From Lepidodermella squamata (Eukaryota > Animalia > Gastrotricha), in assembly GCA_047495785.1 (NCBI GenBank), contig JBLDXI010000015.1:1364001-1428000 (forward strand): 64,000 bases of DNA, in the 5' to 3' direction. Below the pieces are notes generated by a model. That model searched no databases. It was not told where the DNA came from and was given only the letters and a program-made list of their open reading frames with translations. Shown here piece after piece: positions 11,100 through 36,543 of the stretch (positions are counted from its first letter, which is position 1; each line of letters opens with the position of its first letter). Both the position numbers and the translations under genes were made by a program.

Positions 11100-12942
11100 C
11101 TATTCATGCGGCGAGTCAAGTAGGGCCGCCATCACTTCATCTTTACTTTCCACGTTGTCATACGTTTCGTCTTCGTTCATAGTACTGGTAGTCCCGTTCA
11201 CTTGAGTCGTGGCGGAAAATCTAACTTTTTGCGAGGGGGAATCGGTGTTATGCACCGGGCCACATGGATCGCTTTCAGCGCGACGTGTTCTCTCAGGGGC
11301 ATAACTGAACGAAGGTCTTAGCAAGTTGCTGTTTGGTCGCCGGATACTGACTTGATGATCAAATACGTGAGAGGAAGCCGTACTAGATTCAGGTCGTTGG
11401 TTGTAGACGCTATGGTAGCTACTCCTTCTAGACTGATTTTGATGATTGTCGAAACTTTTTCCAAATAAACGCGGGCAACATATGGCGCCAAGTTTCATGA
11501 TCATGAGAACCAGCTCGCGACGGAATTTTTCCCCAGCGAGGACAAAGACGAAAAAATTATCAGCATAGCTCACATTTGTAAGGAGAGAAGCAGCCTTCAT
11601 GATCTGTATTAAACGATTGCTGAAACCTCAATCCAATATTGATATTAATAACGAAACTTACCGTGCACAAGTCCAGAAATTTGACAACAGCTGTCCGAAA
11701 TCCGTAAACAAGATGAAGCACGCGAATGTAGATCATTAGGAAGAGAAGAGGCGTAATGTAGACGAAGAAGCTGCATGAGACAGCCAGAAGTAGCACTGTG
11801 GTTTTCCTGTTCCGGCCATCGTTGCCCTTAACGCTCATCCTATTCGCGGTTTTCCCATTAGAAACTGAATTCACTGTCGGAGCAGCGCCCAGCGATAATG
11901 ATGTGGTGAGCTTTTTCGACTCGTGAGGCTGATTAGGTGTCCTGAAGGACACACTCGTCTGCCCGCCACGGTGAATGGTACCCTGCCTACTGACTTCGCG
12001 GCCCATTCGGTAGACTTGAACAATGACAGCCGCGTTCATGAAGAAGATGAGAATGGCGGGAAGGAAGCACAGTAGAAGTAATTGATGAATAAATAAGTCG
12101 ATGTTCTGATAGATTTGGAACTTCGTAGCAAAGCAGTTGGCTAAATGCTCTATCACAATCGTCCCATTTGAGTCATTTTTGTATGTCGGTGGCTAGAGAA
12201 AGGGAAAAAATTTCAATTCAAATGGAATTAAAACTCAACTAACCACTTGAGTGTCGAAAAAAGGCCTCCAACTTTGCGAGAAGAGAACAATGCCAAACAG
12301 ACTTCCCAGAGTAATCTTAGACATTTTAGCTGAGAAAATGGTTTGAACAGACATAGGAAAGCAAATTGCGACGAATCTCTCTGTTGTAATGAAGACAACT
12401 ACCCAGTGAGACATAAGCTGAACGACGTGAAGCGCTGATCTGTAAAATTTACATCCAACTATGCCAATATGGGCTTCAAGAGTTATGTTGGCGTATTTTA
12501 GAGCCAACCGATCCGCCGCTTGCACAGCTAGCACGAATAAAGTCAGCGAGTTGAACAAAGCAAGCACGCTGAGGGAGAGTGCGTAAGATCTCGAACGAAG
12601 CCCACGTCTACGCATCATGACCAGGGAAAATACATTTCCAACAGTTCCGATGAAGAACAGAGTTATGTCGAGAATGTCCCACCCGAACCAATCGCAAGGA
12701 AGCCCTGATTCAACGAGAGGCTCGGAATCTTCAGCAAGGGTGTTGTTAACCGTTGTTAGATCAGTTAGGCCGTATTCATTATTGAAACGGATGCTGTCAA
12801 CATCGTACTTCATCTTTGAGAAAGAGCTGGTCAACGATGCAGCTGTAGTTGTGAATTTCATCCGCAAAATCCCGCTTTTTCTCGTAACTGTCTGCCGGTA
12901 AGCCGATGCATTAATCGCCGTGGAGAGCGCCTTTGTCGTCAT
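11100..12942 (-). CDS. Class A GPCR, FMRFamide/myosuppressin-receptor-like, paralog B (3 exons)
   Basis: GTVGNVFSLVMM, GCKFYR, TTERFVAICFP, HQLLLLCFLPA, YADNFFVFVLAGEKFRR. Clearly homologous to 5555-7228 and shares two intron positions with it. The true start may be a downstream Met. Confidence 0.88.
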
Positions 12943-15625: not shown

Positions 15626-18600
15626 GACTTTGATTCCTGCTTTAATTAAAAAATGATGAAACCCACGCGGATATTAAGATACTGGTAGCAAGCACTCGTA
15701 AAAAAATTGCGTGAGTGTTATCTCCCTACACGAAAAGCCGCTAAGGCGCCGATAAGACAAGATAAGAGATACTTTAGTATAAAACCTCAAATGAGACTTT
15801 TTGAAGGAAATTCCAAAACCATTAGTTGCAAGGATGCTGTTAGGCTGTGTCAAATCGCTTCAATAGGTGGATATGTCATTTTCTTGCAGTGACACCAGGC
15901 CTCCGAGACATTAAAGAACTGCCGCTCATGTTACCAGATCCAACGCAGCTTCCGCGCGGAAACGACGCTAACTTAAGATCGATTAGTCGCTTGGTTTCCC
16001 CAAAATATATTAAGAATTATCAATCCTTCGATCAAGTGCTTTAAGAATCGTCTTGTTACACAGAAATTATGTCCGGTCCACCGTAAATCGAAATGATCAT
16101 CTGAGAAACCTGAGGCAGAATGGGCAGGTCCCCGGAGGGGGACTGCTGTTAGGCGGAAGCCGACCCCCCGTTTTTCTCTGTTTGTGGTGGGCGACTGCGG
16201 CAACAATTCTCTGTTTACTTTAAGTTTCTGCAGATTTATAGATTTCAAATAAGTCTTTTTATTTTCTAATCCAAGAAACACGCCAAGAGTTTTCAAGGTC
16301 CCGGGTATTTTAGTACTGTGCAGTATGGCTGCTGCGCCCCAGCGACAAGCGGACGTGTGAAGCGAATGTTATCCTTTGGCCCAACAAATGTTGCAGCTTG
16401 CTCACCGCTGTATGCAAACCGCTGTAAGGAAGTAAGAATCGTGTGATGTTTTTACCTAACTTGGATAGACAAAGTATTGAAGTATTGAAGTAAGAAGTTT
16501 CTGCTAGTTTCCATTAAAATTATATCTTTTATCATAGTGTCGTATATCATAGTATTGTCTTACGCTATGCATTTTGACTGCATATTTGGACTAACCGTAT
16601 CGTATCGTTTTAGAAAAATTCATATATTTTATTTTGATAAAATTATCAGTTAGATAATTCGTAGGCAGATTTTTTTATTTTTTGGCACGGAAAGTAGAAT
16701 CTTCAAATTTACTGCGTTATTCGACGAAACAACGGTATGTAGTGCTAAAAACATCTTTAAAAGGTGGGGAAGAAGTTAGACTGTTGTTTATTTAGTACCG
16801 TTTTTTATTTATACACTTCTGCAACGTTAGTATTTGACTGAAAAAGATAGGTAAAATGGCAAGAGGTCATGTCATCAGCGTACTATTTGCATTTTATTTT
16901 ATTTTATTAAAATCAATCAGGAAAGGCGTGCTTAGAGCCATGGTTGGAACCTTCATTTTATTATTCATTTTTGTAATACAAGCGCTATCACAAAGCACCG
17001 AATGCTGATGTACCTCGAAGCTGCTAAAGGCTCGGCATTACTTTTTTGAATAATAATTTCTTTTCCGGGGCTAGCTTCTGATAAACATGATTTTACGAAA
17101 TGTCGTTAGAATCTCGCGTCTTTGCTTGAAACCCTGAGCAAATTCTCCTGCCGGTCTGGTCAATGATGTGGCTTGTGGTGAATCAGGAATCTTTCACATA
17201 AAAGCGCTTGGCATAGCAATTTAACTGATATCTAACTTCATTGCCTTTCTTACAGGAAAGGATTTAGGCTTCGCGTCCTCAAGTTTTTGGCGGGAGAAGC
17301 GGTATCTTTCAATGAATTCAGCCACAAATGGGTCCATTCTTCCCTATGAGTAACGTATATTGGGATGGCACCCTTACTATCGCCGACCTAAACGATCCCA
17401 AATTTTAGAGCCTTGAATCTGCCAGCTAATTACTTCCTCCCTTTTGAAATATTGCACTGGCAGCCCGAATACCGTTTTTCGCATAAAGTTTCAACTATGG
17501 CTCGGGTATAGAAGTGGCTCATTCAGCTTGCAATGGGACGAAACGGATTCTTTAATAATTAATCAAGTGTGCTTTAGCGGACATTCAATTCTTCTAGATA
17601 TCAGGGGCGAAATCAATCCGCCACTCTCATTCCGCACCGCGTTCCAACCTAGAACCAACCAAGAGTTGTAGTGACACATAGTTTTAGTAGGAGCAACATT
17701 ATAACTAACGCAAAAATAACTTTTCCTACAACTTCAATCGCACAAAGTGAAGACACCAAAGATAGCACTTTTCAGAATCTTAGAGGGAGCTCGAACGAGT
17801 ATTATTGCAGTGAGGATTTCTTGCTGTACCCAACTAGACGGTTGGCGGCTATAAACTACCCAACCTCGTTCTTTGTCTCAATTGACCCAATCTTTCTAAT
17901 ACGTTAAGTTAATTTTTTCAAAACTTGAGCCAAAAATATACCATCATCAGTTGTATTAGCTGCCAAAATCTTGGATTTTTTGTTTCTCCAAGCAAGGAAT
18001 GTCAAGCTACCCGTGATCCCCTAGGCTATCAGTGCCTCGCCGATCGGAACATGAGCTTCTCGGAGATGCTAGAGTCAATACTATTGGAATTATAGGACCC
18101 ACATCGGAATGACATCGGAGGGGGGTTTCGACCTGGCCAAAACCAAACGGCGGCAAAAGTCGACTCAAATTAATACAAACAAACTTTCAACACGACCCAA
18201 TCTCAATTCTCTCTCCATTTTTTATGATTTGAAGCCGATTTGAACATTCAACAGATTCAACAAAAAGCTTTCCTTTGATTTCCTGAATCATGAAAATCAG
18301 AGCTTGCTTTGATATGGTAAGTCTGCTATCGATGTAGAGCAATACCTACAGTTTTACGATCAAATTTAAGTAAGAAGATGTATAATGACGAGACTTGGGC
18401 AAGGCTCGGAGGAAAAAAAAATTGCTACTGAAACGATAACGGTTAGCGCATCATAAAATGAGAAAAAATGTGCAGCGATTGTGAAACCATTCAAAAAGAT
18501 AGTGATAGATGATAGCATGGGCCAGACAAAAATCATGAGACGTACTTCAGATAGGCGCTGCGGCTTCGAAGCCCGCAATCCCTCAAAGATGATTGTGATG

Positions 18601-19015: not shown

Positions 19016-19215
19016 CTGCGCGCCTTTGTTCGTAACAAAATACGCGTGCTTAGATTGGAAAAAAGCGCTAAACAGCGCAAAAATGTTGCTTGTACTTATA
19101 TATTTGTACATGTATGTAAATGCAAGCGATACGCATTAGATAAGTAATATTCTTGCGTAATAATATGCGCGCACTGCTGTCTTGCCGCGGTGTTTAAGCG
19201 CTAATTAAGGCAGAT

Positions 19216-19295
19216 GGTGCCGAAGGGTGCCGACGGGTGCCGAAGGGTGCCGAAGGGTGCCGAAGGGTGCCGAAGGGTGCCGAATGGTGCCGAAT
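19216..19295 (+). repeat. 10-bp minisatellite (GGTGCCGAAG) x8
   Basis: Eight consecutive units: five exact, one GGTGCCGACG and two GGTGCCGAAT. The array ends 51 bp before the RepHel ATG at 19347. Confidence 0.95.
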
Positions 19296-19346
19296 GAGAA
19301 TCTCATATATTATCATCGTATTCCTCACGACAACTGAAACGAGGGC

Positions 19347-22300
19347 ATGAATGCTGAAACATCAGCCGATGACGATGCAGCGAACGGGCCGCGCCTGGTT
19401 ACCGATGATTCCATTGTTGTGAACCAGACTGTCGACTTTACAAACCGAAGCGCGCGCCTCGAACGAAAAAAGTCGTCCTATGCCAAGAGGAAGGCGACTG
19501 AAGACAACGCTAGTCGAGCCGGTCACTTGTTGAAGAAACGCGAGAGTATGTCGGCTCAGCGTGCTGCTGAAGATGTCGCCCGAAAACGTCAGCGCCTGGA
19601 TAAGGCAAGATTCGACGCAGCAACGCGTCGATCAACCGAAACTGATGTAGAACATCAGCGACGGCTTGAAAGTGATGCTCGCCAGCACAGAGACCGATAT
19701 AACAAGATCAAGAAAACTAAATCAACTAATATCATTGACTCCTTAAATGACTCCTTTGATGCCAAAACAGATTCTTTACTGACTCATGACGAAATAACCA
19801 TTTTGAATGAATCCCATGAAATCTTTGTTGCTAGTGACGACTACCGCGAAAAACTTGTTTCTGATGCACTGGAATTTTCGCAGAAGCGATATGATCATAA
19901 AATATGCCTTGTTACTGATCTCTATACTCCAATGTTTGAATGTACGTCAGTCAGGTGTGATAATCTTCCATTCCAAGCGCTTGCGTATTTTTGTGGAAAT
20001 AAACCGTGGACTACCGAGCCCATGTTTGAGTCATACGACTGTAATAAATTTAATTCCAGATTAAATCGCCTTTTGCTATCACCGAGGTCGTTTTACTTTG
20101 ACGAAGCTGAGAAAGCCTACTTTTGTTGGATTACCACTGATATATTGATTTACCTGAACGAAGTAGAGAAAAAATTGTCAAAGGGTACGAAGCAATCATT
20201 TGAGGTTCCTAAATTTGCGATTGCCGACCATTTTGTGCTGGGAAACAACAGAATGTTTTCAGATGCAGGTTATATAGCAACTCAGTGCATTTCACTGGCT
20301 CGTGTATCCGGCAATATACGTGTAGTTTTCGGCGGAGTTGGTAATACACTCAGCAGCAATTTGATTTGTTGGGATAATTACGAAGCTACTATTGCATCTA
20401 GTCTTCCGCAATCTCTAAAAGATGGCGTCGCTAAAGTTATAATGGCTGGCCCCATAACGAGCGATCAGGAATTACTCATGGCTACGAAACTGCAATTTGA
20501 CCCTAAAATTGTGAGACAATTACACGAAGAATGCATTCGTATTAATCCTTTATTTGAACACTTTCCAAAAAATAATGGTCCCTTGGGAGACATCAATGAT
20601 GTTATTTTTCGGCTTCCTGAGGATGATACAACCCGAGAACTTATAAATAACGCCAGAAAAATACGAAAATCTGTGGCAGACACGACAGAAGATGATAACA
20701 TATCTCAGTCGAATGCATTCTCGGAGACGGAAGTTGTAATTATAGACGCGAAACATAAGAATGATAAATTGACGCAGAAAGCCGTTAATTTACTTCTCAA
20801 CGGAACACCTGAGGGAAATACGTTTGTTGCACACAGATCAACAACAATATTAAAAGCTACTGACGATTTGTTTTTCGAGAAAGTGTTTCCATGTTTATTT
20901 CAATACGGGTGCGGAGGTTTGAAAGAAGGGCGTGCTCATCATTACACTCTCTTTGAATTAGCTAAACATTACCTCATGTTATCTACCGAAACTTTTGCTA
21001 CGCATCCCACTTTCAAGTTAGTACTGTACGACTACATAAGCAAAGAGAGCATTATAAGGCAGCTCAAAGTTAAAACTAAAATAAAGCCGCATGTTATACC
21101 AAATGTAGCGAAGCTAACAGGCGCTGAGCGCTGATATATATACCGCAGTTCAAACTGATTCTCTTAATAAAAAGCGAAGATATTTCAATGAACAAATTCT
21201 CACAGACAACGAAGAAAGAGACATATTAAATACCATATCAGCCAGTGTTTCTGCGCGACTCGGCAGCAACGAAGAGCGTACTGATTTTCAGCGAAACCTT
21301 GACTCGATAATCATTTACCGCGGCATACCGTCCCTTTTCTTTACGTTCACGCCGAAACCAGATTCTTCGTTGTTAGTTGCATTTTGGAACGGAGCAAACT
21401 GCCAGAGAGAAATATTGCCCGACGAAAGCAGTGCTTTAGCTAGCTGGATGACTTCAAGCTCGATATTATTGGCTTTGTATAACCTGTATAATGGAAATAT
21501 TATTTGCATTTGATCTAAAAAAGAAACAACCAAAGAAAAAACCTGGGTTATTGGGCCACGTGGAAAGTTTGTATTTTGCGCCCGAATCGCAGGCTAGACT
21601 GAGAATCCATTGCCATGGCGTAGCTTGGATTGTAGGATTTCCTCGCGACCGCGATGAATTCATCAAACTAATGAATGACGTCGATTTCAGCAACACGTAT
21701 CTGAAATTTCTTAACGAATTAATCAAAACTGAATTACCAGTATTTTGGGACTTACCAGCAGAAAACGCAATTTTGTGTAATGCTAACAACTGCGGTGGTT
21801 ATTTGGAGCCGGTAAAAGTCGACCGAATGTACTCACATATTCTACAGAAAACAACACCGCCGCCGATAGTAGCACAGTGTAAAAACTGCAAAAAATCCCA
21901 TACCAATGATGAAGTTATTGATACCGCAATAGAAATGAAAACTCAGGATTTCACGCCTGAGGAAATAATGGAAATCAGCGATGAAAATATAAATAAAATT
22001 CGACTATTACCTGGAGGTTTCTCAATAAACAAGCGTGTTCGGCATGTTCAATTGACCAAGAGTTTGCGAAAAGACCAGATCCACGGCTATACACATACTT
22101 TCACGTGCGGTAAAATTACTAGAAAAGCAAGTAAAAAGAGATCGCTTTGTAGATTCAAATTCCCTCAAAAATTAGTAACAGAAACTGGAGTTGACAAGAA
22201 CACCTTGCACCTATATACCAGGCGAACCTTAGGAAATGCATGGGTAAATAACTATTGCCCAGAGATACGTTTGATCTATGACTTTAACATCGATATTTGC

Positions 22301-25300
22301 CTCGTAGCTAACGCAGCAATATCAAGGGCTATATATGCTGCTAAATATTCTGCGAAGGTGTTCTATATTAAAGATGCAGCTTACGTAGCTACTCTTGGCT
22401 TATCTACACGAATAAAAAACGAAAACAATCTCGACATTGATGTGCATCGAGTAGGACTTAAACGCTTAATAGCCATGTCAATGAATGAGAGTTCCGTTAT
22501 GGAAATAGGATCGCCGCTTGTTACCCACTTTTTACTTACAGGAAAAGGTGGTTATTTCTCCGATGAATTCGCCTCTTTGCTTTTAACTCAAGGCTTAAAC
22601 ATGCTTGAGGATAAAGATTTATCATGCATAATCACACAGAATAAACACGGTATGTTTGAAAGAAACGCGGCCATATATGATTATTTATATCGACCAAAAG
22701 AGCTAGAAAACATGCCCTGGTATTGGTATGTCCTGGCCTACAAAAAAGTTACGAAAAAAATGAAGAGCCACTACAGATTTCACCCCAATCATCCACAATA
22801 CGAATCACATCGTATTCTCATAAGAGCGCAGACTGTAGTGCCACGCATTGTCGGCCCAAGATTTCCGAACCGAGATAAATTAGATGAACATGAAGGTGAC
22901 GCCGAGAAATATTACAGATGTGCTCTACTATTGTATAAAGCTTTTCGAGATCCAAAAACAGAATTTCTAGACGAAAATGGCAGTTCCAAAATGGCGTTTA
23001 ATAATTGGAAAAAATCGAGAGAAATTCAGAACAAGCTTAATTATCACCAACAATTCTACTTTGCCCAGGAAGACAGTGCAAATTTCAGAAAAGAAGAAGA
23101 TGCCCGAGAAAAAGATATGGCCATTGAAAGCGAATATATCATAAACAAGAATTACAGCAGTGGCGATAAAATTATCTCAATTGACGATGAAAATTTGATA
23201 AATTTCTATAAAAAATCGTCGGACTGTTTACAGAGGGCTGAGACAATGCACACAGATATCATTGACGAATCAATTTCCAGTTTAGTAAATTTTACATTGA
23301 AAACAAATCTCAGACAAAGACATGAAGCAGAATATGGTTCGGACGAGATACAAATAAAAAAGCCAGTGACTCGAGAACAGTTGAAGGAGGTTAATGATAA
23401 GGCGAAAATAAACGCTATGACTACGATTTCAGAGAGCGAAAGCACAGAAACACGGCAAATATACAAAAATATTGAGTTGCCCCAAACCCAGGCTATAATC
23501 CTGAAACGCATAACGGAAGCAATAACATATAACCGACATGAAAGTGTACATTACACAGAAGAGATAGGAAATAAAATATACCCCACACTCGCTGAGGTTT
23601 CCGCATACTTCAAACTCAACTTGAAACAGCACTATGTTTTCATTTTATTCGCCGGCCGTGTTCTAATAAAAGCTTTTGATATTCAAATTGAGTGTTTACC
23701 CGAGATTTTCACGAAATGCGATCCTTTACTAGTTATCGGTTCAGGAGGATGCGGCAAGTCACAGACTATTTTTGCAATTCAACACTTCTTCAAAATGTGG
23801 GGCCTAGCTAATTGCGTCAGCTATGAGGGAACTACAGGCAACAGTGCAAGTATTATACGCGGCGAAACATTACATTCATCATTTTCTTTGAAACCACCGA
23901 TAAACGACATTCCTAATCATCTGAAACAGCCGAGCGAAGAGTTAATTAACAAATGGCGCGGAATCCACGGACTAATACTCGACGAGGTAAGCATGCAAAA
24001 CCAAAAAACATTCGGAATAGCAATCGAAGCCCTTTACGCATTAAAGGAAACAAAAAAGACAAAAAAATGGCCAGATATACAGATAATGATACTAGGTGAT
24101 TGGTTTCAGCTCGAACCAGTTCAATCACGATTCCTCTTTCAGCCACCAAAAGAAGCCGATCAATTTACACAAATGGCGTATGAAAAATATATGTCAATAA
24201 AAAACGTTATATATCTAACAGAACAACACAGGTATATAAACGATCCAGTCTGGGGAGAAGAGCTAAAAAATGGTAGACGAGGAAAATGGACGCAAGTAAT
24301 AAAAGACATCCTCGACGGGTGCGTCATTCAAGACTTGTCGCAACTCAACGAACTAGTAGGAAATGCGCCTATTGTCTCTCCTGATAATAACACACGACAC
24401 ATGGTTAATATGGCTGCTTTACAGAAAATAGCAACAGAAAACCAAGATCAGCGCGTATTTAAAATACCAGCGATTATACGAGGAGCTTCAGTCGCCGACA
24501 TGCTATCAATTTTCCAACTTCCAGAAAATAAAACAGGGAATATACCAGCAATTTTACATGTGTTTGAGGGTATGCCAGTAAAAATTAAAGTAAACCAAGC
24601 TGTGAGTAAAGGTGTATGTAATGGCGCGAGCGGAACAGTAAAATATATTCAATGGGAAAAAGACACTGAGTTCACTCAGGACGGCGTATTTTGGCGTCCT
24701 AGCAAACCACCAATAAATATATTCGTAGACATCGAAGGAAACAATAATTCGTTGAGATTTCCAGGTTTACCGCGATTTTGGCCCGCGAGTGTCATGCCGA
24801 TAAAAAGAGAATCACGGTCAGTGAAGTTAAATCGACACGGTAAAAAGTATACTATAAACAACTTTCCCATACAACCTGCATATGGTGCAACGTGTCACTC
24901 AATCCAAGGCAGCACGCTTGAGTATATTATAATAGCAGACCCACGTCCGTCCAGCATGAAGAAAATAGATGCGCATAGCTTATATTTAGCGCTGTCAAGA
25001 GCAAGAACACGAAAAGGTGTTATTTTGCTAAAAAAATTAACAGACGACGATTACGCATTTTTCACGCCAAAATCGAGCACTCTTAAAGAGGACGAGCGTC
25101 TCATAGGGCTGAGTAATCAATTAGAATTGCTTTTGCAGTCGTATTTTGACAGACAGAAGGACAATAATTCGAATTGGGTGTCTAATTTCGGACGCAAATT
25201 CACTTCTTTCGTTGAGATGATAAATAATAAGAAAACGTTCAACACTACCAGCGACAGCGATGAAGATGACGATGATTGTGATAGTGATGCGTGGAACTAT

Positions 25301-26386
25301 GAGGAGGAAATACGACATTACGTTAGCAACATCACAGCAGCGAACACACGTGAAAACGACAGAGAAAATATCAAACGCGCACCTCAAACAAAACAAAACA
25401 TCAGCAACGCTACACCTTTTACGCAGAGTATAAACAATTATGTGCACACATCAGCAGAAAAACACATGCAGCCAGCAAACACGTCCAACTCAGGAATTCG
25501 CAATATCGGAAACACATGTTATATTAATGCGAGTTTGCAAGCATTTGACGTTTGCATTGGTTTCAAAGAATGGCTCCAAGCACATCTAACGTGGTTGAAT
25601 GAGACACAGCATGACGCCCATGTCAGTGATATTTTCAGCAGTCTTTTCACGATACTACAACAAATAAACAATCGACTAGACAATGTGGATGCGGGGCGGT
25701 TCAAAACAGCAATGGGCGTACTGCATCCCAATATATTTCAAAATTTCGAACAACAAGATAGCCGAGAAGTGTTTTTAAAAGTAGTCGAACTTGAAACTCC
25801 GGATCTACTTCATAACTTTGGCATTAGCTTGTGTTACCGCGATTCATGCACTATATGTAACACGCAAACCGAGCGCCTCGAACGTACGTCACTCGTTAAT
25901 TTGCTCCTACCCGAAAACAACAGCCAGTGTACAGTAGAAGAAATAATAAACGAATATTGTCACACTACAATTGTTAAGGAATGCAGCAATTGCAAAGAAA
26001 ACAAGATGCATAATCGGGAAATTTTGTTTCAGGAACCATCTAGCAACGTAGTTTTACATCTCAGCCGTTTTGATCAATATCAACACGTTATTGATCATGA
26101 CAAAGAGAGCTCAAGCAAATCACAACCGGCGTTAATCAATGACCAGAAAAATCTATCGCCTGTCACTTATCCGGATCATATAACGATAGCAAATAAAAAC
26201 TATGATCTCTCAGCAATTATATGTCACCACGGAATAAACGTGACTAGTGGGCATTATACAACATTCGCCCGAAAAACTGGAACAACAACATTTTATCACT
26301 ACAACGATGATAAAGTCAGACAAGCCACAAATTTCCTTGACCAGCGTCGCGAAGTATATATGTTGTATTATACATTACACACATAG
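19347..26386 (+). pseudogene. Helitron RepHel transposase (HUH Rep + Pif1/SF1B helicase) fused to a C-terminal USP/peptidase C19 domain; interrupted by two frameshifts (~21128, ~21484)
   Basis: N-terminal charged repeats, P.FAIA..F..G, FPCLFQYG.GG, F.THPTFK. The bridging frame 21135-21490 reads ...GSNEER...GIPSLFFTFTP (Rep motif 1). Then ESQARLRIHCHG (HUH motif 2), QIH..HTFTC...CRFKFP...VNNY...NIDI...YAAKYSAK (motif 3). Helicase: GSGGCGKS, GETLHS, LILDEVSM, GDWFQLEPV, LTEQHR, GVCNG, FPIQPAYGATCHSIQG, YLALSRAR. USP: GIRNIGNTCYINASLQ, QQDSRE, CTIC/CSNC, LHLSRF, YDLSAIICHHG, GHY, YNDDKV, YMLYY. Confidence 0.92.
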
Positions 26387-26914
26387 TGTTTTTTCATTTC
26401 CTCTCCTCTCTTTTCAATCACATCATCAGCTTGCAGATAAGAGCCGTAGTCTTGGGCGAAAAACCACACCTATTGTAAGCCGTTGCGCAACGCCGATTTC
26501 GCTTCGCCCCATTGACGCGTGCACACACACCTGGAATGACGTCGTAACCAGACTCGACAAAACGAAGCCAGTAATTAGCGACGAAAAGTGCCATTATAGG
26601 CAACCAGCAACCCCGTCATTAGCGAGAGGTCAGAAGAGCAGTTGTCACTACTAGTCAATAAAAATATAATTAGCAGATAAATCAATCGAGAGCCTCCTTA
26701 ATTTTGTGACTTACCGGCCACTAATATTACTAGCGTCAGCGACCAGGCGATCAGGTCGCTGGGTCAGCCGTTTCTTCTCGCCGCCAATCGATAATTAATT
26801 ACCCGCCGTGGGTGAGAACAGTCAGACACGGACCATTCGTGCACTCTGCGACTAACTGATAAATAGATTTTTCAAAACTAAAGGCTTCGTTTGTTTTTCA
26901 ACTCGTAACTCACC

Positions 26915-27619
26915 ATGGAGAGACAATCAATTGCAGAACTATGGCAAGGCGACTACAACTTCTACCTGCAAGGCGTGGTGCAGGGAGCCCCGCAGAAGAT
27001 CGCCGACGGTTCGCAAATGGCTGTCGTACTTAACGACCAAACCGGAACTATCCGTGTCGTTATCAAAGGCACAGGACTGCCCCCGCTCTTCAACGGCTGC
27101 TCGATTCGAGTTCAGGAACCGACCATTTCGGTAACTAACTGTTTTATGTTAAACAATCTGTTTCATCTTTCCTTGCATCTCTTCGTACAGGCAGCATCTC
27201 GCTACAGCGAGACAGGCCACAAATACGAGTTGTGGGCTGACGTCACCGACATTGAACACAGCCCGGAATGCACGGCTGCCCACGTTGACGAATACGCTCT
27301 TGTTGACGACGTGGCTCACGTCAACCTCCACGAGAAGGTTGCCGTCAAAGGGCTCATCACTCACGTCTTCCCCAAGAAGCCGAGCGATAACCGTTACCGT
27401 TTCGATATCGCCGGCCGAAACCGCGTCATCCTGGTTGTGGCCTTCGGCGAACGAAGCATGCCGATCGAGGGCACCGTCGTTCAATTCAAAGGGGTGGTGG
27501 GCCACTTCGCTCAGGACCGCCAGATCAACGTTAGCGAACGTAATGCCATCGTCGTGGTCAATGAACCAGCTGACCAGTATCGCCCCCACGGCAACGCTAA
27601 ACGCGCACCGATTGTCTGA
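26915..27619 (+). CDS. RPA70-like two-OB-fold ssDNA-binding protein (element-borne), with a probable 60-nt in-frame intron at 27131-27190
   Basis: IAEL...F.LQGVV...VVLNDQTGTIRV...G....|A..RYS.TGH.YEL....T.I resembles RPA70 DBD-A. V.VKGLITHV...R.DI.......VVAFGE......V.FKG.V..F...QINV resembles DBD-B. The insert gtaact...cttcgtacag has splice ends and a pyrimidine tract. AATAAA lies at ~27819. Confidence 0.75.
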   Translation: MERQSIAELWQGDYNFYLQGVVQGAPQKIADGSQMAVVLNDQTGTIRVVIKGTGLPPLFNGCSIRVQEPTISVTNCFMLNNLFHLSLHLFVQAASRYSETGHKYELWADVTDIEHSPECTAAHVDEYALVDDVAHVNLHEKVAVKGLITHVFPKKPSDNRYRFDIAGRNRVILVVAFGERSMPIEGTVVQFKGVVGHFAQDRQINVSERNAIVVVNEPADQYRPHGNAKRAPIV

Positions 27620-28210: not shown

Positions 28211-30363
28211 TATAAATTAAATTTAGTATAAATAGTTTTTATTATTTATTAATATGCTATCATTTGGTCTATTTAATAACCAGATTAGCCGCATGCGAAA
28301 ATAAATTTTCTAACTGATTCCCGGTTACGCAAGAGTCAGCCTTTGCCTCGTTGACGCATCTTTTCTACGTCAGTCATCTCTTACTAGACCTTTTCTATAT
28401 AAAACATCAACATAAACCTCCTTTTTCCGCAAGACAACGCAAGACAAGGGGACCTGCCCATTACGCCACGCTGCAAGCGCAGCGCAGCGGCGTAAGACAA
28501 TTTTATCATCATTTACGAACTGCTTTCAAATCTATTATATCGAGAACATGAAAACATGTTTGTGTCAATCCATGTTTTAAAATGGCAAACGGCATGAGCT
28601 CACATGATCAGGGACCGGGCAGTTTCGCGGTTAAAATCAACTGACGGTGATCAAAAAAAACGAAAAGTTTTCACGCAAAAATTCTACAAAAAAGCACGCA
28701 ATTATTAATGGTATTATTATTGATGGCTTTATTTAAACTAAAATAAAAATAAAAATTAATCGATTATTTTGATAACTTTTTTATGTGACCTTCACTTCCA
28801 AATTTAAAAATATTGGCGCCAAAATTTGCATTGCGGTTTCGCATCCGCCGTGTAGGGGTCGTAGAGTGTAGTCGGTGAGCATTTTCCTGGAAGGGACTGG
28901 TTCATTATTTAGTTTTGGATAATCTTTAATTTTTACGCATCGTGTGATATCTTGAGTTGAATTATCAAGCTTTATGCCTGTGCACTCTTGACCTTACCCG
29001 CTTGCTGCATCTTTTTTCTAATGCCTAGAAAAATCTTCTTTGTTGTCATCATTTTGCTTTCGGGTTGATTTAATTTCTCAGCTTGAATCTTAACTACTGT
29101 AATCTTTTTCGAAGTTCGTTTTGTTCGATTTATCTTAATCTAGTTCCTTTTAAACTTTTCCAACCTTGGTGTAGGGAATGTCTAGGTAGTTCTCGTTTGT
29201 ATTCGGTATTTGGGTAAGGGGTAAGTAGGTATGCTAACTTGCCACACCGGAATCCTGCGAATTTCCTGTTAACATTGGCCTGCCTCCGATAATATCAGCT
29301 GGCTCCGGGGAATTGTTTTGATCACACTTAAATTCAACAGTTGACAGGTGACGAAATTTTTCTTTAGTTCGTGGTTCGTGGTGGGCAATAAATTTGAAGC
29401 TGGAGCATCTTTCTCCATTTACCGTGACCCATACAAAAGCTTGAACTTAATGAATAAAGGTTGGTTTCATTGAGGCTGAGGTCGCGTATTTCTTAACTTG
29501 AGATTCAATTATTTTAAGCTCGATTCTACAATACTTCTTTGGAAAGTAATTTTAGTTTGGTGTGCTAGGGTGCTAGCAGCGAGAAGTCACTTGCACTTTC
29601 CTTGTGCCTTGGTTACAAGTGCTGTACCAGATATCAGTAATTGAACTATTCGTGAATCTTGGATAGTAGATGCTAGTTGATGGTTGACGCCTATTTCGCA
29701 CGTTTTCACATTTATACCGCAGTCCCTTGGCCTCCTTCCTATTTCTCAAGTTCATTTCGTCCTCGCATTGTTCAATACATTCTATTCATTTTCATGTAAT
29801 CTTTGTGCTGCGCTTGACCGGGGTAATTATTCCTAATCAAGTAAATCAATCATTCCATCGCTAGGAGAACAGTGTGCGTCATATTGTTGGTTGTTGGCAA
29901 GTTAATTCTCGTTCGTCATGTACGAATTTTTCTATGCGCATTGTATTTCATGGCAACTTCATAGCTCTGAATTCTTTTTATCATCGGCTGTCGATTGGCT
30001 GGCAAATTAGCTTTCAAGAAACCGTTCGGTATGTACAATGACAAATTCGACGCACTACCTCTGATTACCAACCTCATCGTCTCCTTCTTGGAGTATTAAA
30101 AAATTACCTATGTAGTTGACAGCTGGTTCTCTAAATAAATGTTCTAAAAGTCAAGGCTATCTTGGTGTATCGCAGGTTGTTGATATCTGATTATCCTTAC
30201 CTTTCCTCCAATGCATGCGAACACGGATATGTGAAATGTTTCTGAATCTTTTTACTTTTGTCAACAAAAAGATAAGACTCGTGAAATAACGCTACTTTTC
30301 TCATTCTTATTTTAGTCCGGCGCAAGCTTGCAAAGCTTGAAAAAGCAACTGTAATCTGCAAAA

Positions 30364-33301
30364 ATGTTAAGACGCTCAGCGCAGTGTGTGTTTAGCTCCA
30401 TCATGTCCACTACTTCAGCCAGACTGACCGGCGCTATGAAACCCAAGGTTGTTTACATGCACTTATAATGCGTAATGTAGTATTAGCAGTACCCCTGTTA
30501 TTATTATTATCATTGCTATTAACATTCAACAACCTCGCTATGCTTCCATGATAACAACGCATTTAATTTTGAACGAAATTTCGTTTGGTTTGAATTTTTT
30601 TTCCGCTGTGCTAGAATACAATTTTCGCTCTATCAGCTACAATGCAGAGCAACGGAGAAGCTCACCAGAATGGCGGTTTGCATACAAGGTTAGATTCGAA
30701 ATTTTCGAGAAATTAATTTTTGACCTAGTTAAAAATGACACACAGCTGCAAAACTGGCTCGAGGCCGAAAACTTGGCTCAATTCAAGCGTGGCCGAAATC
30801 GACCCGGAAATGCACGATCTGATTCAGAAGGAGAAAGTTCGCCAACTCGAGGGGCTTGAAATGATCGCCTCGGAAAACTTTGCGAGCTGCGCTGTTCTGG
30901 AAACGCTCGGCTCTTGCCTCATGAACAAGTACTCCGAGGGTCTGCCGGGCCATCGTTATTACGGCGGTAATGAAATTATCGATCAAATCGAAACTCTGTG
31001 CCAGAAACGAGCGCTTCAGGTCTATGGCCTAGACCCGGAACAGTGGGGCGTTAACGTCCAGCCGTATTCTGGGACCCCGGCGAATTTCGAGGTTTACACC
31101 GCGATTCTAGGCCCGCATGGCCGTCTGATGGGCCTGGACCTGCCTGACGGTGGCCATTTGTCGCATGGCTATCAAAGCGCGACGAAGAAAGTCTCGGCGA
31201 CTTCGATGTTTTTCGAGTCGATTGCGTATAAAGTTGACAAGGAGACGGGGTTGTTGGACTACGATAAAATGACGACGATTGCAACGGCTTTTCGGCCTAA
31301 GATTTTGGTTGCGGGCATGAGCTGTTATCCGCGATTTTTCGACTACGCTCGTATGAAGAAGATCGCTGATAGCGTTGATGCGTATTTGATGGCCGATATG
31401 GCGCATATTAGCGGTCTCGTCGCTGGTAAGGTCATTCCAAGCCCGTTCGATCACTGCGATCTTGTTACAACCACAACTCACAAGTAAGTCTATAGGTCTA
31501 TACTTTTTTACGATTGGCTGTTATGGCTAATACGGTGTGTCCCATAAGTAACGCAAGCAAATAAAATACACGGAAAAAGGGTTCTGAAACTCCAAAATGA
31601 GAGACAAAGTCAAATCTCATGGCCAGACAAATTTTTGAAAAATCACGAGAATAGTAATCAAGTATGTCAGTTGTTAATGGGATTAGAAAAGTCCGGAGAA
31701 ATCTGGTCAAACCAGGTAAAATACCAAAAATTACCGAACCAGTTACCATCCGGGTTTTTCCCGGTAAATTTTTGTATTTCTTGGGTTAAATCGAGAATAA
31801 AAAAAAATGATCTCTCGGTAGGTAATTAAAAAACTATAGTTGACGTTTCTAAAATAAGTTGCCAAATTAAAAAATAGTTGCGCAACTTCTGGGAGACGCT
31901 GTATGGTTGAGCTTTAAGAAATATAAATTCTCATTCTCAGCCGTGAGCATAATTTTCTTTCTCGAATTTATGAAATGTTTGCCATTTTGAAATTGAAAAA
32001 CTTAACCAATCCTTTTGCATTGGTTTTATCTCAATTTTAATGTTTTAACAAAATTTATAATTTTTACTAATTATTTTACTTTTTTATTTTACTTTTAGGA
32101 CTCTTCGTGGCCCGCGTGGCGCGTTGATTTTCTTCCGCAAGGGCGTTCGCCGCGTGCTGAAAAACGGCGAGAAGGAGATGTACGACTTTGAGAAGCGCAT
32201 CAACGACGCTGTTTTCCCCGGTCTGCAGGGCGGCCCGCACGAGAATCAAATCGGCGCCTGTGCTGTTGCGCTCAAGGAAGCTATGACCCCGGAATTCCAC
32301 GAATATCAAAAGCAGGTTAGCATCACAATTTATTTTTCAAATTTAACTTCCAATTTTGGCCAGAAAATTATTTAATATTGAATTTTTTTTAACGAAATTG
32401 CTGGCGAGCCGACATTATTTGTCCTAAAAATTGCCAAACCTTGAATTTTTTGTAGATTTTTGGTATCCTGAAGTCGAATATTTTTTTAAATTGTTTTTGC
32501 TCATTTTTTCAGGTCTTGGCCAATGTTCAAGTTATGGTCCGCGAGCTCACAAGCCGTGGTTACAAAGTTGTAACCGGCGGTTCTGACGTGCATCTCGTGC
32601 TCGTTGATTTGCGCCCGATGAAGCTGGACGGCAGCCGCGCCGAGCGCATTCTCGAGCACATCGGCATCGCCGTGAACATGAACACGGTGCCGGGTGACGT
32701 GAGCGCCCTGCGCCCGGGCGGCATCCGCATCGGCTCGCCGGCCTTGACTTCGCGCAATTTTAAAGAGGCCGATTTCACCAAGGTCGTCGACTTCATCCAT
32801 CGAGGTTAGTTGAACTGACATCTCAGATTCTGATTTCGGAAAATTCATATTTTCGCGAAATTTAAAAAAGGCGAAAAATCGCTGAAGTTTCAACGTTTCC
32901 TGCAATTTTGTCTATTTTTGTCAACATTTTCAGTGAAAAGCTGATTGAATCACTATAAAGAGCTAATTTCGATATTGGAAATTTCCATCGATAATTTTAA
33001 TCGAACAAATAATCGATAATTCAAATTTTGAAAAAATTCGGGAATTCTCAAGAAATATTGTTTCCTCAATTAAATTCTGCAATTTTTGAAAACTATATCC
33101 CAGTCAATAATTCCTATTTTTCCGATATTTTCAGGCATTCAGATCTCGCTGGAAATCCATTCCGCAGCGGGCAGTGATAAATTCAAGGATTTCGAGGCGA
33201 AAATTCCCGATTTCAAGCCGAAAATCGACGCGCTGCACGAGGAAGTCAAGAATTTCGCCCGCGGATTCCCGATGCCTGGCTATTTCGACAAGCTGATGTA
33301 A
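30364..33301 (+). CDS. SHMT: Serine hydroxymethyltransferase, copy 1
   Basis: [55 protein letters not shown]|TLRGPRG (PLP lysine), [28 protein letters not shown]. Core exons 30729/30746-31483, 32099-32315, 32514-32804, 33135-33301. The first exon is ambiguous (see findings). Confidence 0.95.
31533..31901. mobile_element. Tc1/mariner-type MITE in an SHMT intron
   Basis: TA-flanked. The left end cggtgtgtcccataagtaacgcaa resembles the reverse complement of the right end (cagcgtctcccagaagttgcgcaa). An internal segment and the right end recur at 54221-54396. Confidence 0.65.
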
Positions 33302-34184: not shown

Positions 34185-36543
34185 ATGTTGCAAGGCCTTA
34201 TTTTGCGCTCGAATGCGAGTCGAATTGTCGCCCATAATTTGCGTCGATCGCTGCAGAATTCAACCGGTTTGACGAATCAACAGGTTAGTAGAAAAAGCCA
34301 TTTTTAGCGGAACCTAATTTGCCTGTAACAACCGAAAATTTTGGCCCAGGCTAATTTTTTATTTTTTTTCCTCAATAAGGTTCCCTTTCCAAGTAGGATT
34401 TTCTAGGCTTTTAATATTATTTACTTTGAATTAAGGTGATCGGCCATGAATTCATCGAAAATAATTCTAGTTTTATTCCAGTTTTAATTTGGTTTCGTTA
34501 TAGATCTTTCAGCTTTTCCCCTGAAGAAAGCGACCTCGTTTTTTCTATTCTGGAATTTTCTATTTTTTTCTGATTTTTTTCAGTGCGATTTGATATTTTT
34601 CTCCAAAAAAATGAGGTTAATTTCTTATTATTTTTTTTCTACGAAGTCGCCTATGTCTGACACGTGCCCATATTTTTCCAGGTCAATTACAAGCAAAACA
34701 TCGATCGCGAAGACCGGCGGTTAAATTTGAACGCGACGCTAGCCGAATGGGACCCGAAACTGGCCGAGTTGGTGCGGCTGGAAAAACAGCGCCAGCGAGA
34801 GGGCCTCGAACTAATTGCCTCGGAAAACTTCACCAGCTGCGCCGTTCAGCAGGCGCTGGGCTCGTGCCTCGTCAACAAGTACTCGGAGGGCCTGCCAGGT
34901 CATCGCTACTACGGCGGCAATGAATTCATCGATGAGGTCGAGCGGATGTGCCAAAGTCGCGCGTTGAAGTGTTTCGGCCTCAGCCATGAAATGTGGGGCG
35001 TTAACGTACAGGCCTACAGTGGGACGCCGGCTAATATGGCTGTCTACACGGCTGTATTAGGCCCGCATGCTAGGCTGATGGGCCTGGACCTGGCTGAGGG
35101 CGGCCACTTCTCCCACGGCTGGCAGAGTGATACAAAAAAATTGACAGCTTCATCGCTGTACTTCGAAGCCCTGCCGTATAAACTCAACCCGGCTACGGGG
35201 CTGATCGATTACGAGCAAATGGCGGTTAATGCTAAGCTGTTCAGGCCGAAGTTGATTATTGCGGGCGTGAGTTCTTACCCGCGCAACTTGGACTATGCGC
35301 GCATGCGCCAAATTACGGACAGTGTTGGCGCGTATTTGATGGCTGATATGGCGCACATTGCCGGCCTCGTTGCGGCTAAACAGGTGCCAAACCCGTTTGA
35401 TCACTGCGATATTGTCACAACAACCACACACAAGTAAGTATTGATAAACAAATTCAGCGAAGAAAATTCAATTTGTTTGAAATTTGAAATTTTGAAAATT
35501 TAGTTTTGATTTTAATTTAAATTTTAATTTAAATGCAACATTTGTTTTCATTTTTTTGCACAGAAATAAATGTTGACTTCGTTTCAATTTTTCAATTTTT
35601 CAATTTTATTGAATTTTTAAAATTCAGGACTCTTCGTGGTCCCCGGGGTGCTTTGATTTTCTATCGAAAAGGCACAAGGCGTGTTTTACCGAGTGGTGAA
35701 CGCGAGGTTTACGACCTCGAGGCCGCTATCAATGACGCCGTATTTCCCGGCCTTCAGGGTGGCCCGCACGAAAACCAAGTCGGCGCCATAGCCGTCGCCC
35801 TGAAAGAAGCCATGACACCCGAGTTCAACGAGTACCAACGCAACGTGCTAGCCAATGTTCAGGTTATGTGCCGCGAATTCATCGCCCGTGGTTACAAACT
35901 TGTAACAGGCGGGTCTGATGTCCACCTTGCCCTGGTCGATTTACGGCCACTTGGCATCGACGGCGTCACGGTTGAGCGGGTACTGGAGCTTATGAATATA
36001 TCGGTGAATAAGAACGCGCTTCCGGGTGATATGAATGCGGTTAAACCAGGCGGTATTCGAGTTGGATCGGCAGCTTTGACTTCTCGCGGCTTTCAGGAAA
36101 ACGATTTCGTTAAGGTGGTCGACTTCATTCACAAAGGTGAGCAACACTGAAAAATATTAGAATCTATTTGCTAGCTAATTACGGTAATTAGCTAATTAAT
36201 TAAGGTAATTAAGGATTAGCTCAATTTATTAGCTTTTTATTAGTTAATTTTTTTATAAATTTTACGCTTTGGCTGATTGTTACCACTTCATTCAGGTATT
36301 CAATTGGCTCTTGATGTCAAAGCGAATTGCGGTCCCGATGTTCCCAACCCGAGCGCCGATTCCGACTACAACGCTCAGAAAAAGACGCATAAATCCTGGG
36401 TGTCACTCTACAAGTTGTCGCCTCAGTTCCGCGAACATCTTTCTGAGCCGCAATTCGCGAAAAGAATCGCGACCCTGAATCGCGAAGTTCGAACCTTCGC
36501 CCGACAATTCCAAATGCCGGGGCAAACCCATTGCGATCTGTGA
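34185..36543 (+). CDS. SHMT: Serine hydroxymethyltransferase, copy 2 (mitochondrial-type leader)
   Basis: Exon 34185-34283 ([33 protein letters not shown]; Arg/Ser-rich, no acidic residues) splices in phase to 34682. Same SHMT motifs as copy 1 and the same intron after THK. Ends ...[11 protein letters not shown]. Confidence 0.95.

What the first reader, a model, noticed from the sequence alone, without database searches (positions are those of the whole stretch)
19347..27619. Helitron encoding a Rep-helicase-USP deubiquitinase fusion plus its own RPA-like ssDNA-binding gene
Seen: directly after the Pif1 helicase, in the same uninterrupted 1631-aa ORF and past an acidic linker (SDSDEDDDDCD), lies a complete USP/peptidase C19 domain (~25490-26386). 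It has a Cys box (GIRNIGNTCYINASLQ), QQD, two CxxC zinc ligands, a His box (HHG...GHY) and an Asp motif (YNDD). A separate two-OB-fold gene follows ~530 bp downstream on the same strand. Established: Helitrons/Helentrons can carry RPA-like genes, AP endonucleases and OTU-type cysteine proteases. I do not recall a USP/C19-class domain as a described RepHel fusion, but I cannot search to confirm that. Inference: this is a three-part module (nick/unwind, coat ssDNA, remove ubiquitin). The tethered DUB could protect the covalent Rep-DNA adduct from ubiquitin-dependent DNA-protein-crosslink proteolysis, or strip ubiquitin from PCNA or H2A at donor or target sites as an anti-repair or anti-silencing device.
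Basis: partly seen in the sequence, partly recalled or inferred. Interest (0 to 1): 0.88.

Follow-up and report, generated by a model that had tools for sequence, protein, structure and literature searches.

The report
Helitron-like transposase ending in USP deubiquitinase
A rolling-circle (Helitron-like) jumping gene in this invertebrate genome encodes one long protein whose DNA-unwinding part runs straight into a complete, apparently active ubiquitin-removing (USP) domain; USP domains in this transposon group were already catalogued in 2024, so this is a well-preserved, very divergent example of a known theme, and the neighbouring 'RPA-like' gene is not shown to belong to it.

Summary
ORF 21491-26386 (1631 aa) carries HUH-Rep motifs, a PIF1 helicase and a full USP/C19 domain (Pfam UCH, E 4.5e-28). 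All catalytic and zinc residues are present, and the model folds as a USP (pLDDT 88, TM about 0.8).

The window copy is slightly broken by a 7-nt tandem duplication at 21121 and about 47 nt missing at 21451. Contigs of three public runs lack both lesions. They read as one 2359-aa Rep-helicase-USP ORF from 19347 to 26386.

The USP is not a recent host capture. Its best relatives are 25-31% identical, and its GC3 and codon usage match the transposase, not host genes.

The architecture is not unique. A metagenomic protein and a GenBank-assembly protein show DUF6570-Rep-PIF1-UCH in one ORF, and a relative has a Ulp1 protease in the same slot. HELIANO (NAR 2024) lists UCH among domains stably carried by group-2 Helitron-like elements. 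This scan had already noted Rep-helicase-USP elements at other loci of this genome.

The 234-aa downstream gene is probably a two-OB-fold protein, on weak evidence only. Its GC3 (0.64) and codon usage are host-like, so ownership by the element is unproven. Element ends were not found. DUB function is inferred, not tested.

Verdict: a new variant of a known kind, of moderate interest.

The parts
19206..19304 (+). Tandem array of a 10-bp unit (GGTGCCGAAG, about 9 copies), ending 43 nt before the transposase ATG. Possible 5' UTR or promoter-region feature; function unknown.
   Evidence: the repeat finder family D1; sequence read.
19347..21134 (+). N-terminal 595 codons of the transposase reading frame. 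It has a basic, coiled region and ends with the conserved FPxLFxYGxGG-type stretch. No Pfam family matches, and DUF6570 is not detectable.
21121..21127 (+). First lesion of the window copy: a 7-nt tandem duplication (GCGCTGA twice) that shifts the frame. It is absent from the contigs of all three runs laid.
   Evidence: read-laying table 4; sequence; frame analysis.
21128..21451 (+). Rep motif-1 segment (…IPSLFFTFTPKPD…), read in a third frame in the window because it lies between the two lesions.
21451..21452 (+). Second lesion: the window lacks about 47 nt that the contigs of runs X1, X2 and X3 carry here. The missing piece encodes part of the conserved Rep 'NPVxxARxF' stretch.
   Evidence: read laying tables 7 and 8; frame test; comparison with alignment A1.
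21491..22480 (+). HUH (Y2) Rep nuclease core: HxH at 21605-21628, CRFKF at 22148-22162, and YAAKYSAK (two tyrosines plus Lys) at 22334-22357.
   Evidence: Alignment A1 with four group-2 Helitron-like Reps; H40, H42, Y282, Y286 and K289 are invariant; coordinates.
23714..25012 (+). PIF1-family SF1B helicase, with Walker A GSGGCGKS at 23738-23761 and a UvrD_C_2-like C-terminal part.
   Evidence: Pfam PIF1 E 3.8e-11, UvrD_C_2 E 1.5e-5.
25250..25282 (+). Acidic linker SDSDEDDDDCD between the helicase and the USP domain.
25493..26371 (+). USP / peptidase C19 domain. Key residues: catalytic Cys1343 (nt 25517), oxyanion Asn1338, QQD 1421-1423, zinc-ribbon Cys 1453/1456/1498/1501, catalytic His1588 (26252) and Asp1606 (26306). 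The stop codon is at 26384-26386.
   Evidence: Pfam UCH E 4.5e-28; PDB sequence alignment to USP15 and USP2; invariant columns of A3; AF2 pLDDT 88 and Foldseek matches to USP1/2/46/14/30 with TM 0.78-0.83.
26517..26517 (+). Possible poly(A) addition site of the sense transcript, 131 nt after the stop. It rests on one contig end followed by 23 untemplated A, and no AATAAA lies upstream.
   Evidence: read-laying table 7; sequence. Weak: a single contig.
26915..27619 (+). 234-aa ORF, probably two OB folds (SSB/RPA-like). GC 0.55, GC3 0.645. Whether it belongs to the element is not shown.
   Evidence: Pfam tRNA_anti-codon E 0.0045, below cutoff; Atlas feature hits of 0.92-0.93 to OB/SSB/RPA clusters for the whole protein and for each half; no homologues; AF2 failed; composition.
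21481..22009 (-). Four minus-strand introns with canonical GT..AG consensus (21481-21539, 21701-21755, 21842-21903, 21956-22009). They belong to a spliced antisense RNA over the Rep-coding part. Two more lie at 26651-26714 and 26856-26913.
   Evidence: read-laying table 5; splice-site sequences; no long minus-strand ORF in the joined exons.

Best explanation
This is a copy of a deeply divergent Helitron-like (rolling-circle, HUH-Rep plus PIF1-helicase) transposon, closest to group 2 (Helentron/Helitron2 side).

- **Architecture.** The transposase gene ends in a catalytically competent USP-type deubiquitinase. The USP sits in the C-terminal add-on slot where relatives carry an AP endonuclease, a GIY-YIG nuclease or a Ulp1 protease.
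- **State of the copy.** The window copy carries two small frame-breaking lesions. Unbroken versions giving one 2359-aa protein exist in sequenced populations.
- **History (inferred).** The USP was acquired long ago and has been kept by selection as part of the transposase.
- **Most likely role (inferred).** The tethered protease removes ubiquitin, or a ubiquitin-like modifier, from the transposase itself or from proteins at the transposition intermediate. This would protect them from ubiquitin-dependent removal or degradation. The same benefit is proposed for the biochemically active VTD and the OTU domains of Helentrons.
- **Neighbouring gene.** The downstream 234-aa gene is probably an OB-fold ssDNA binder. 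It may serve the element, but it has a different evolutionary history.
For: **Shown**
- Domain content and motifs.
- A confident USP fold.
- Run contigs lack both lesions and give a single stop-free 2359-codon frame. The missing piece restores a conserved Rep motif.

**Against recent or neutral capture**
- Best identity to any of 1.84 billion representatives is 25-31% for single domains. The 37% top hit is a mammalian USP17 tandem array.
- The domain sits on a long branch in the tree, with no named host USP as sister.
- Every catalytic and zinc ligand is kept despite this divergence.
- USP GC3 is 0.374 against 0.367-0.371 for Rep and helicase. Codon usage correlates with the transposase (r 0.44) and not with host genes (r about 0).

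**Recurrence**
- P0179 and P0218 are DUF6570-Helitron_like_N-PIF1-UCH in one ORF. In P0218 the USP is at the extreme C-terminus.
- P0056 has Peptidase_C48 in that slot and P0055 has an endonuclease.
- HELIANO finds UCH stably in two group-2 subclades.
- Helentron VTD domains are active DUBs and deNEDDylases (PMC9741609).
- Earlier scan notes list at least five other Rep-helicase-USP loci in this genome (leads, not checked here).
Against: - No enzymatic or genetic test exists. The substrate (ubiquitin, NEDD8, ISG15 or other) is unknown.
- Only one copy is in the window. No close relative was retrievable. So dN/dS, copy number and element ends could not be measured.
- Group-2 membership is not proven. 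Pfam Helitron_like_N and DUF6570 are not detected, and the Helentron diagnostic RGSPHxH reads ARLRIHCH.
- The window copy itself is broken.
- RNA evidence for the sense strand is one poly(A) contig end. The clear splice evidence is antisense.
- The USP tree does not join the window USP to P0179/P0218 with support (SH-aLRT 37). A single ancient acquisition shared with those elements is therefore not shown.
Confidence: 0.7

Rival explanations
1. Passenger capture without function. The USP segment is a host gene fragment that a Helitron picked up, as Helitrons often do. It happens still to be in frame but does nothing for the element.
For: Helitron-like elements are notorious gene capturers, and HELIANO interprets extra domains as ancient captures. 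Only one copy could be examined here.
Against: - The domain is at most 31% identical to any single USP domain found.
- It nevertheless keeps all catalytic, oxyanion and zinc residues and a confident full fold.
- Its codon usage is that of the transposase.
- The same fusion recurs in unrelated lineages at the same position.
- Neutral sequence would not stay open and motif-perfect over that much divergence.
Confidence: 0.1
2. Domesticated gene. The locus is no longer a transposon but a host gene derived from a Helitron-like transposase-USP fusion, kept at a fixed site and expressed for a host function.
For: - There is a single copy in 64 kb.
- No recognisable termini were found.
- Near-identical sequence occurs in runs labelled as two organisms (A and B), with apparent RNA coverage.
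Against: - The window copy carries two frame-breaking lesions while other samples do not. That pattern fits polymorphic or decaying transposon copies rather than an essential host gene.
- Logan contigs break inside the element, as expected when several similar copies exist (table 8).
- Earlier notes report several Rep-helicase-USP loci in this genome.
- Rep catalytic residues are all retained.
Confidence: 0.1
3. The USP acts as a processing or regulatory protease for another modifier (SUMO, NEDD8, ISG15) or on chromatin or PCNA at the target. It would not stabilise the transposase. The OB protein is a genuine element-encoded partner, giving the reader's three-part module.
For: - Relatives carry a Ulp1/SUMO-type protease in the same slot (P0056).
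- Helentron VTDs also cleave NEDD8.
- The top structural match is USP1, the PCNA/FANCD2 deubiquitinase, but by a negligible margin.
- OB/RPA/SSB genes are known in group-2 elements.
- Both halves of the 234-aa protein give OB-like feature hits.
Against: - Structural ranking among USP1, USP2, USP46, USP14 and USP30 is within noise.
- The OB gene's GC3 (0.645) and codon usage follow host high-GC3 genes (r 0.59), not the transposase (r -0.14).
- The OB gene has no detectable homologue.
- HELIANO reports that RPA lies upstream of RepHel in group 2, whereas this gene lies downstream.
Confidence: 0.1

Closest known systems
Group-2 Helitron-like elements (HLE2: Helentron/Helitron2) carrying a UCH domain, as catalogued by HELIANO (Li et al., NAR 2024, PMC11417382)
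   Same: Both are rolling-circle Rep plus PIF1 transposases associated with a Pfam UCH (USP/C19) domain. HELIANO reports UCH as stably included, almost exclusive to HLE2, and enriched in two subclades. It reports SSB-like OB genes in the same group.
   Different: - HELIANO counts UCH among domains in separate ORFs and gives no residue-level, structural or functional analysis. Here the USP is fused in frame at the C-terminus of the helicase.
- This Rep is so divergent that Helitron_like_N and DUF6570 are not detected.
Unnamed single-ORF Rep-PIF1-UCH proteins P0179 (ENA metagenome contig k141_271051) and P0218 (GCA_003358065.1, PJEL010005248.1)
   Same: They share the order Rep - PIF1 helicase - USP in one uninterrupted ORF. 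In P0218 the USP is at the extreme C-terminus. The minimal USP domain is about 300 aa with all catalytic residues, including a shared VTSGHYTT His box.
   Different: - USP identity is only 27% and helicase identity about 24%.
- They have recognisable DUF6570 and Helitron_like_N domains.
- The tree does not join their USPs to this one with support.
Helentron-encoded VTD (Herpes_teg_N) and OTU deubiquitinase domains (Erven et al., Nat Commun 2022, PMC9741609)
   Same: Each is a cysteine isopeptidase built into a rolling-circle transposase. VTDs were shown to be active on ubiquitin and NEDD8, and were proposed to prevent degradation of proteins needed for transposition.
   Different: - The protease fold differs (USP/C19 against VTD or OTU).
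- VTD and OTU sit N-terminal or upstream, in elements that also carry a C-terminal AP endonuclease.
- Here the DUB is C-terminal and no endonuclease is present.
Canonical Helentrons (Rep-Hel-AP endonuclease) and the GIY-YIG-tailed Helitron-like elements noted elsewhere in this genome
   Same: They share the Rep-helicase backbone, with a variable enzymatic module fused behind the helicase.
   Different: The module here is a protease, not a nuclease. Termini, subTIRs and T/T target could not be checked.

Membership tests
Helitron-like elements (eukaryotic rolling-circle transposons) | HUH-type Rep with HxH motif and two catalytic tyrosines (YxxxY) | tested here: met
   IHCHGVAW (21605-21628) and YAAKYSAK (22334-22357) align to invariant columns H40, H42, Y282, Y286 and K289 with four Helitron-like Reps. 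Pfam Helitron_like_N itself does not score.
Helitron-like elements (eukaryotic rolling-circle transposons) | PIF1-family 5'-3' helicase fused C-terminal to Rep in the same protein | tested here: met
   Pfam PIF1 E 3.8e-11 at aa 742-944 of the same ORF, plus UvrD_C_2.
Helitron-like elements (eukaryotic rolling-circle transposons) | Defined termini (hairpin or subTIRs), no target-site duplication, multiple copies sharing ends | tested here: inconclusive
   There is no second copy in the window. One 20-nt inverted pair (16114-16133 / 28448-28467, 90%) with a nearby 6-bp palindrome is about as good as chance.
Group 2 (HLE2: Helentron/Helitron2) | DUF6570 (PF20209) upstream of Rep, the HELIANO marker of HLE2 | tested here: not met
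   No Pfam hit in the 595-aa N-terminal part even at E 10. hhalign of a four-sequence DUF6570 profile against it gives probability 0.6%. This may reflect divergence.
Group 2 (HLE2: Helentron/Helitron2) | Rep motif 2 diagnostic 'ExQxRGSPHxH' (Thomas et al. 2014) | tested here: not met
   The window reads ESQARLRIHCH, with neither the Helentron S nor the Helitron L.
Group 2 (HLE2: Helentron/Helitron2) | Nearest Rep/helicase relatives are HLE2 proteins | tested here: met
   The only helicase and Rep hits (P0055, P0056, P0179) all carry DUF6570, at 21-27% identity. No formal RepHel tree was built.
USP / peptidase C19 deubiquitinases | Cys box, His box and Asp/Asn catalytic triad on the USP palm-thumb-fingers fold | tested here: met
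   Pfam UCH E 4.5e-28. C1343, H1588 and D1606 lie on invariant columns and align to USP15 and USP2. The AF2 model has pLDDT 88, and Foldseek TM is 0.78-0.83 to USP1/2/46/14/30.
USP / peptidase C19 deubiquitinases | Isopeptidase activity on ubiquitin conjugates | not testable with these tools
   Needs Ub-AMC or Ub-PA assays.
RPA/SSB-like OB-fold ssDNA-binding proteins of Helitron-like elements | Recognisable OB fold(s) of the RPA/SSB type | tested here: inconclusive
   Pfam tRNA_anti-codon E 0.0045 (17 bits against a cutoff of 27). Atlas features score 0.92-0.93 for the whole protein and for both halves. AF2 single-sequence pLDDT is 32. No PDB or database homologue was found.
RPA/SSB-like OB-fold ssDNA-binding proteins of Helitron-like elements | Gene lies inside the element and travels with it | tested here: inconclusive
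   Ends are unknown. GC3 is 0.645 and codon usage is host-like, against 0.37 for the transposase. No other copy is available.

The most novel reading that the evidence does not exclude
The C-terminal USP is an obligatory, cis-acting part of the rolling-circle transposition machinery. It would strip ubiquitin from the covalent Rep-DNA (5'-phosphotyrosine) intermediate, or from the transposase, so that the host's ubiquitin-dependent DNA-protein-crosslink repair or proteasome cannot abort transposition. Four different isopeptidase folds (OTU, VTD, USP, Ulp1) have been recruited repeatedly by group-2 Helitron-like elements. That recruitment would then mark a general host-transposon conflict over ubiquitin-type tagging of HUH transposases.
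Probability: 0.15. Interest if true: 0.8.

Novelty: new variant of a known kind. Interest (0 to 1): 0.42.

Why it matters
Rolling-circle transposons have now been seen with OTU, VTD, USP and Ulp1-type proteases. Only the VTD type has been tested biochemically, and nobody knows what any of them does for transposition.

This element offers a clean, minimal USP domain of about 300 aa, tethered directly to the helicase, with natural unbroken alleles. It is a convenient test case for whether deubiquitination protects an HUH transposase or its covalent DNA intermediate.

It also shows that current profile tools miss very divergent Helitron-like Reps: Pfam Helitron_like_N and DUF6570 both fail here. 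The finding itself does not open a new category.

Tried and rejected
- **Word-indexed homologue searches.** The USP part found only distant host USP8-like proteins. The helicase part gave four hits at 21-25%. The OB protein gave none.
- **Metagenome scan.** A scan for relatives of the 1631-aa protein found nothing.
- **Exhaustive USP search.** The top hits looked special but are mammalian and bird USP17-like tandem arrays whose scores are inflated by many domains. I rejected them as close kin.
- **Context of nearest tree neighbours.** P0074, P0148, P0071, P0072 and P0093 lie on contigs too short to show any transposon context.
- **OB protein structure.** AF2 on the single sequence failed (pLDDT 32). 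The PDB sequence search gave only chance SPRY hits. The N and C halves show no mutual similarity by BLASTP. There is no similarity to the small gene upstream of P0218.
- **59-nt skip at 21481-21539.** I considered it as a sense intron that would mend the second frame break. I rejected this because its ends, and those of five other skips, are canonical only on the minus strand. The run contigs explain the frame by a 47-nt difference instead.
- **Antisense exons.** Joined together they hold no long ORF.
- **Flanks.** No Rfam family and no extra Pfam domain were found in the flanks.
- **Termini.** The candidate subTIR pair is not better than chance.
Full report
**1. Observation**

The region holds three same-strand ORFs: 19347-21134 (595 aa), 21491-26386 (1631 aa) and 26915-27619 (234 aa).

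Pfam on the 1631-aa product gives three hits:
- PIF1 at aa 742-944, E 3.8e-11.
- UvrD_C_2 at aa 1130-1174.
- UCH/PF00443 at aa 1335-1627, E 4.5e-28, 99 bits against a cutoff of 23.9.

So the core observation is correct: a complete USP/C19 domain follows the helicase in one uninterrupted frame, after an acidic linker.

**2. The Rep part and the state of this copy**

Pfam does not recognise Helitron_like_N. An alignment with the Rep regions of four Helitron-like proteins places the window's HxH, CRFxF and YxxxYxxK on invariant columns (A1).

Rep motif 1 (…PSLFFTFTPKPD…) lies between the two long ORFs in a third frame. The window therefore needs two frame changes, near 21121 and 21451.

Laying the contigs of three public runs on 21000-26999 showed the following:
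- All three runs lack 7 nt at 21121. The window has a GCGCTGA tandem duplication there.
- All three carry extra sequence at 21451: 46 letters plus a repeated base in the X1 contig.
- With those two natural differences, the frame from 19347 to 26386 is a single stop-free 2359 codons.
- The extra piece encodes the 'NPVxxARxF' stretch that the other Reps also have.

The window copy is thus a slightly damaged copy, or a mis-assembled one. Unbroken alleles exist.

**3. The USP domain**

- *Sequence.* Comparison with solved structures aligns the Cys box, QQD, second CxxC, His box and Asp motif with those of USP15 and USP2.
- *Conservation.* In a 52-sequence alignment the invariant columns are the catalytic Cys, His and Asp. 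The near-invariant ones include the oxyanion Asn, QQD and the four zinc cysteines. The window has all of them.
- *Structure.* An AlphaFold model built on that alignment is confident (pLDDT 88, pTM 0.88). It matches USP1, USP2, USP46, USP14 and USP30 at TM 0.78-0.83. No subfamily stands out.

**4. Is it a recent host capture?**

No.
- A word-indexed search found only distant USP8-like proteins at 21-26% identity.
- An exhaustive HMMER scan of 1.84 billion representatives gave 3142 hits. Single-domain identities did not exceed about 31%.
- The apparent best hits are USP17-like tandem arrays of a gopher, birds and an avocado, with scores inflated by up to ten domains.
- In a tree of 174 USP domains, the window sequence sits on a long branch (1.19 changes per column, best identity 27%). 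It lies in a 10-member group of unnamed metagenomic proteins (SH-aLRT 96). No annotated host USP is its sister.
- Composition agrees. USP GC3 is 0.374, against 0.367-0.371 for Rep and helicase and 0.61-0.69 for neighbouring host genes. Codon usage correlates with the transposase (r 0.44), not with host genes (r about 0).

A domain that has diverged this far and still keeps every functional residue has most likely been under purifying selection inside the element. This is an inference; dN/dS could not be computed.

**5. Is the architecture unique?**

No.
- P0179 (2598 aa, metagenome) and P0218 (2675 aa, GenBank assembly GCA_003358065.1) are DUF6570-Helitron_like_N-PIF1-UCH in one ORF. In P0218 the USP is at the extreme C-terminus.
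- Their USP is 27% identical to the window's over its full length, with the same VTSGHYTT His box.
- P0056 has a Ulp1/C48 protease in the same C-terminal slot, and P0055 has an endonuclease.

In the literature I could search, two papers bear on this:
- HELIANO (PMC11417382) lists UCH among 20 domains stably included in Helitron-like elements. It finds UCH almost exclusively in group 2 and enriched in subclades c and d, but places it among domains in separate ORFs.
- Erven et al. (PMC9741609) showed that Helentron VTD domains are active deubiquitinases and deNEDDylases. They suggested that Helitrons benefit from deubiquitination supplied by different DUB classes.

No other paper linking Helitrons with USP-type domains turned up.

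This scan's own earlier notes report at least five other Rep-helicase-USP loci in this genome on other DNA. One follow-up there reached the same literature conclusion. I could not inspect those loci.

**6. Group assignment**

The only detectable Rep and helicase relatives are group-2 proteins, at 21-27% identity. Two diagnostics fail:
- DUF6570 is not detectable.
- The Helentron motif RGSPHxH reads ARLRIHCH.

I therefore call it Helitron-like and nearest to group 2, not a proven member.

**7. The 'RPA-like' gene**

Evidence for an OB fold is weak but consistent:
- Pfam tRNA_anti-codon E 0.0045, below threshold.
- Language-model feature hits of 0.92-0.93 to OB/SSB/RPA clusters, for the whole protein and for each half.

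Other tests gave nothing:
- The single-sequence structure prediction failed.
- No homologue was found.

Its composition sets it apart. GC3 is 0.645, and codon usage correlates with host high-GC3 genes (r 0.59) rather than with the transposase (r -0.14). Its exact antisense frame also holds a 146-aa ORF with no family hit.

But this gene has a different history from Rep-Hel-USP, and nothing here shows that it lies inside the element.

**8. Surroundings and ends**

The element lies between a GPCR-like gene (minus strand, up to 12942) and two tandem SHMT genes (from 30735). The window holds no second copy or fragment. The one candidate inverted-repeat pair is no better than chance. The ends are therefore undetermined.

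**9. Transcription**

Run X2 behaves like RNA.
- One contig ends in untemplated poly(A) after 26517, 131 nt past the stop. This fits a sense mRNA.
- The six clear splice joints all have canonical consensus on the minus strand only.
- Contig depth is about 300 over 21000-22000 against 2-28 elsewhere. A spliced antisense RNA therefore overlaps the Rep-coding 5' part. It has no long ORF.
- Contigs cannot give strand or level, so sense expression remains weakly supported.

**10. Mechanism**

*Shown:* the parts list and the integrity of the catalytic residues.

*Inferred:* the tethered USP removes ubiquitin, or a related modifier, from the transposase or from proteins at the transposition intermediate, and so counters degradation or extraction.

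The marginal top structural match to USP1 is not evidence for them.

**11. Verdict**

The element is a new, very divergent variant of a known, catalogued association (Helitron-like group-2 elements with UCH domains). It has an in-frame C-terminal fusion that has not been described in detail. Interest is moderate.

Noticed in passing
window 21481-22009 and 26651-26913, minus strand: Six short introns (54-64 nt) with canonical GT..AG consensus on the minus strand are spliced out in contigs of runs X2 and X3. This indicates an abundant spliced antisense RNA across the Rep-coding part of the transposase and across the spacer before the OB gene. The joined exons have no long ORF.
   Followed up: partly
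window 26915-27619: The small OB-like ORF has GC3 0.645 and host-like codon usage, next to a transposase with GC3 0.37. It has no detectable homologue in 5.8 billion proteins.
   Followed up: partly
window 19206-19304: A perfect-to-near-perfect tandem array of a 10-bp unit (GGTGCCGAAG, about 9 copies) sits 43 nt upstream of the transposase start codon.
   Followed up: no
window 30735-31487 and 34664-36150: Two tandem serine hydroxymethyltransferase (SHMT) gene copies share about 75% nucleotide identity over a 200-nt stretch. The first appears to hold only the N-terminal 232 profile positions in one ORF.
   Followed up: no
window 26775-26818: An AT-centred palindrome (…CGATAATTAATTA/TAATTAATTACCCG…) lies in the spacer between the USP stop and the OB gene. 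A 55-nt piece at 26748-26802 is the only part of this spacer matched by a separate, diverged contig of run X3. This hints at a conserved non-coding motif shared with other copies.
   Followed up: no
P0056 (2837 aa) and P0148 (1320 aa, L004): P0056 is a group-2 Helitron-like protein with a Ulp1/Peptidase_C48 domain in the C-terminal slot. P0148, one of the nearest USP relatives, combines UCH and Peptidase_C48 in one protein on a short Logan contig.
   Followed up: no
window 11100-12942, minus strand: Three consecutive ORFs have weak rhodopsin-type or serpentine GPCR hits. They are probably exons of one chemoreceptor-like gene upstream of the element.
   Followed up: no
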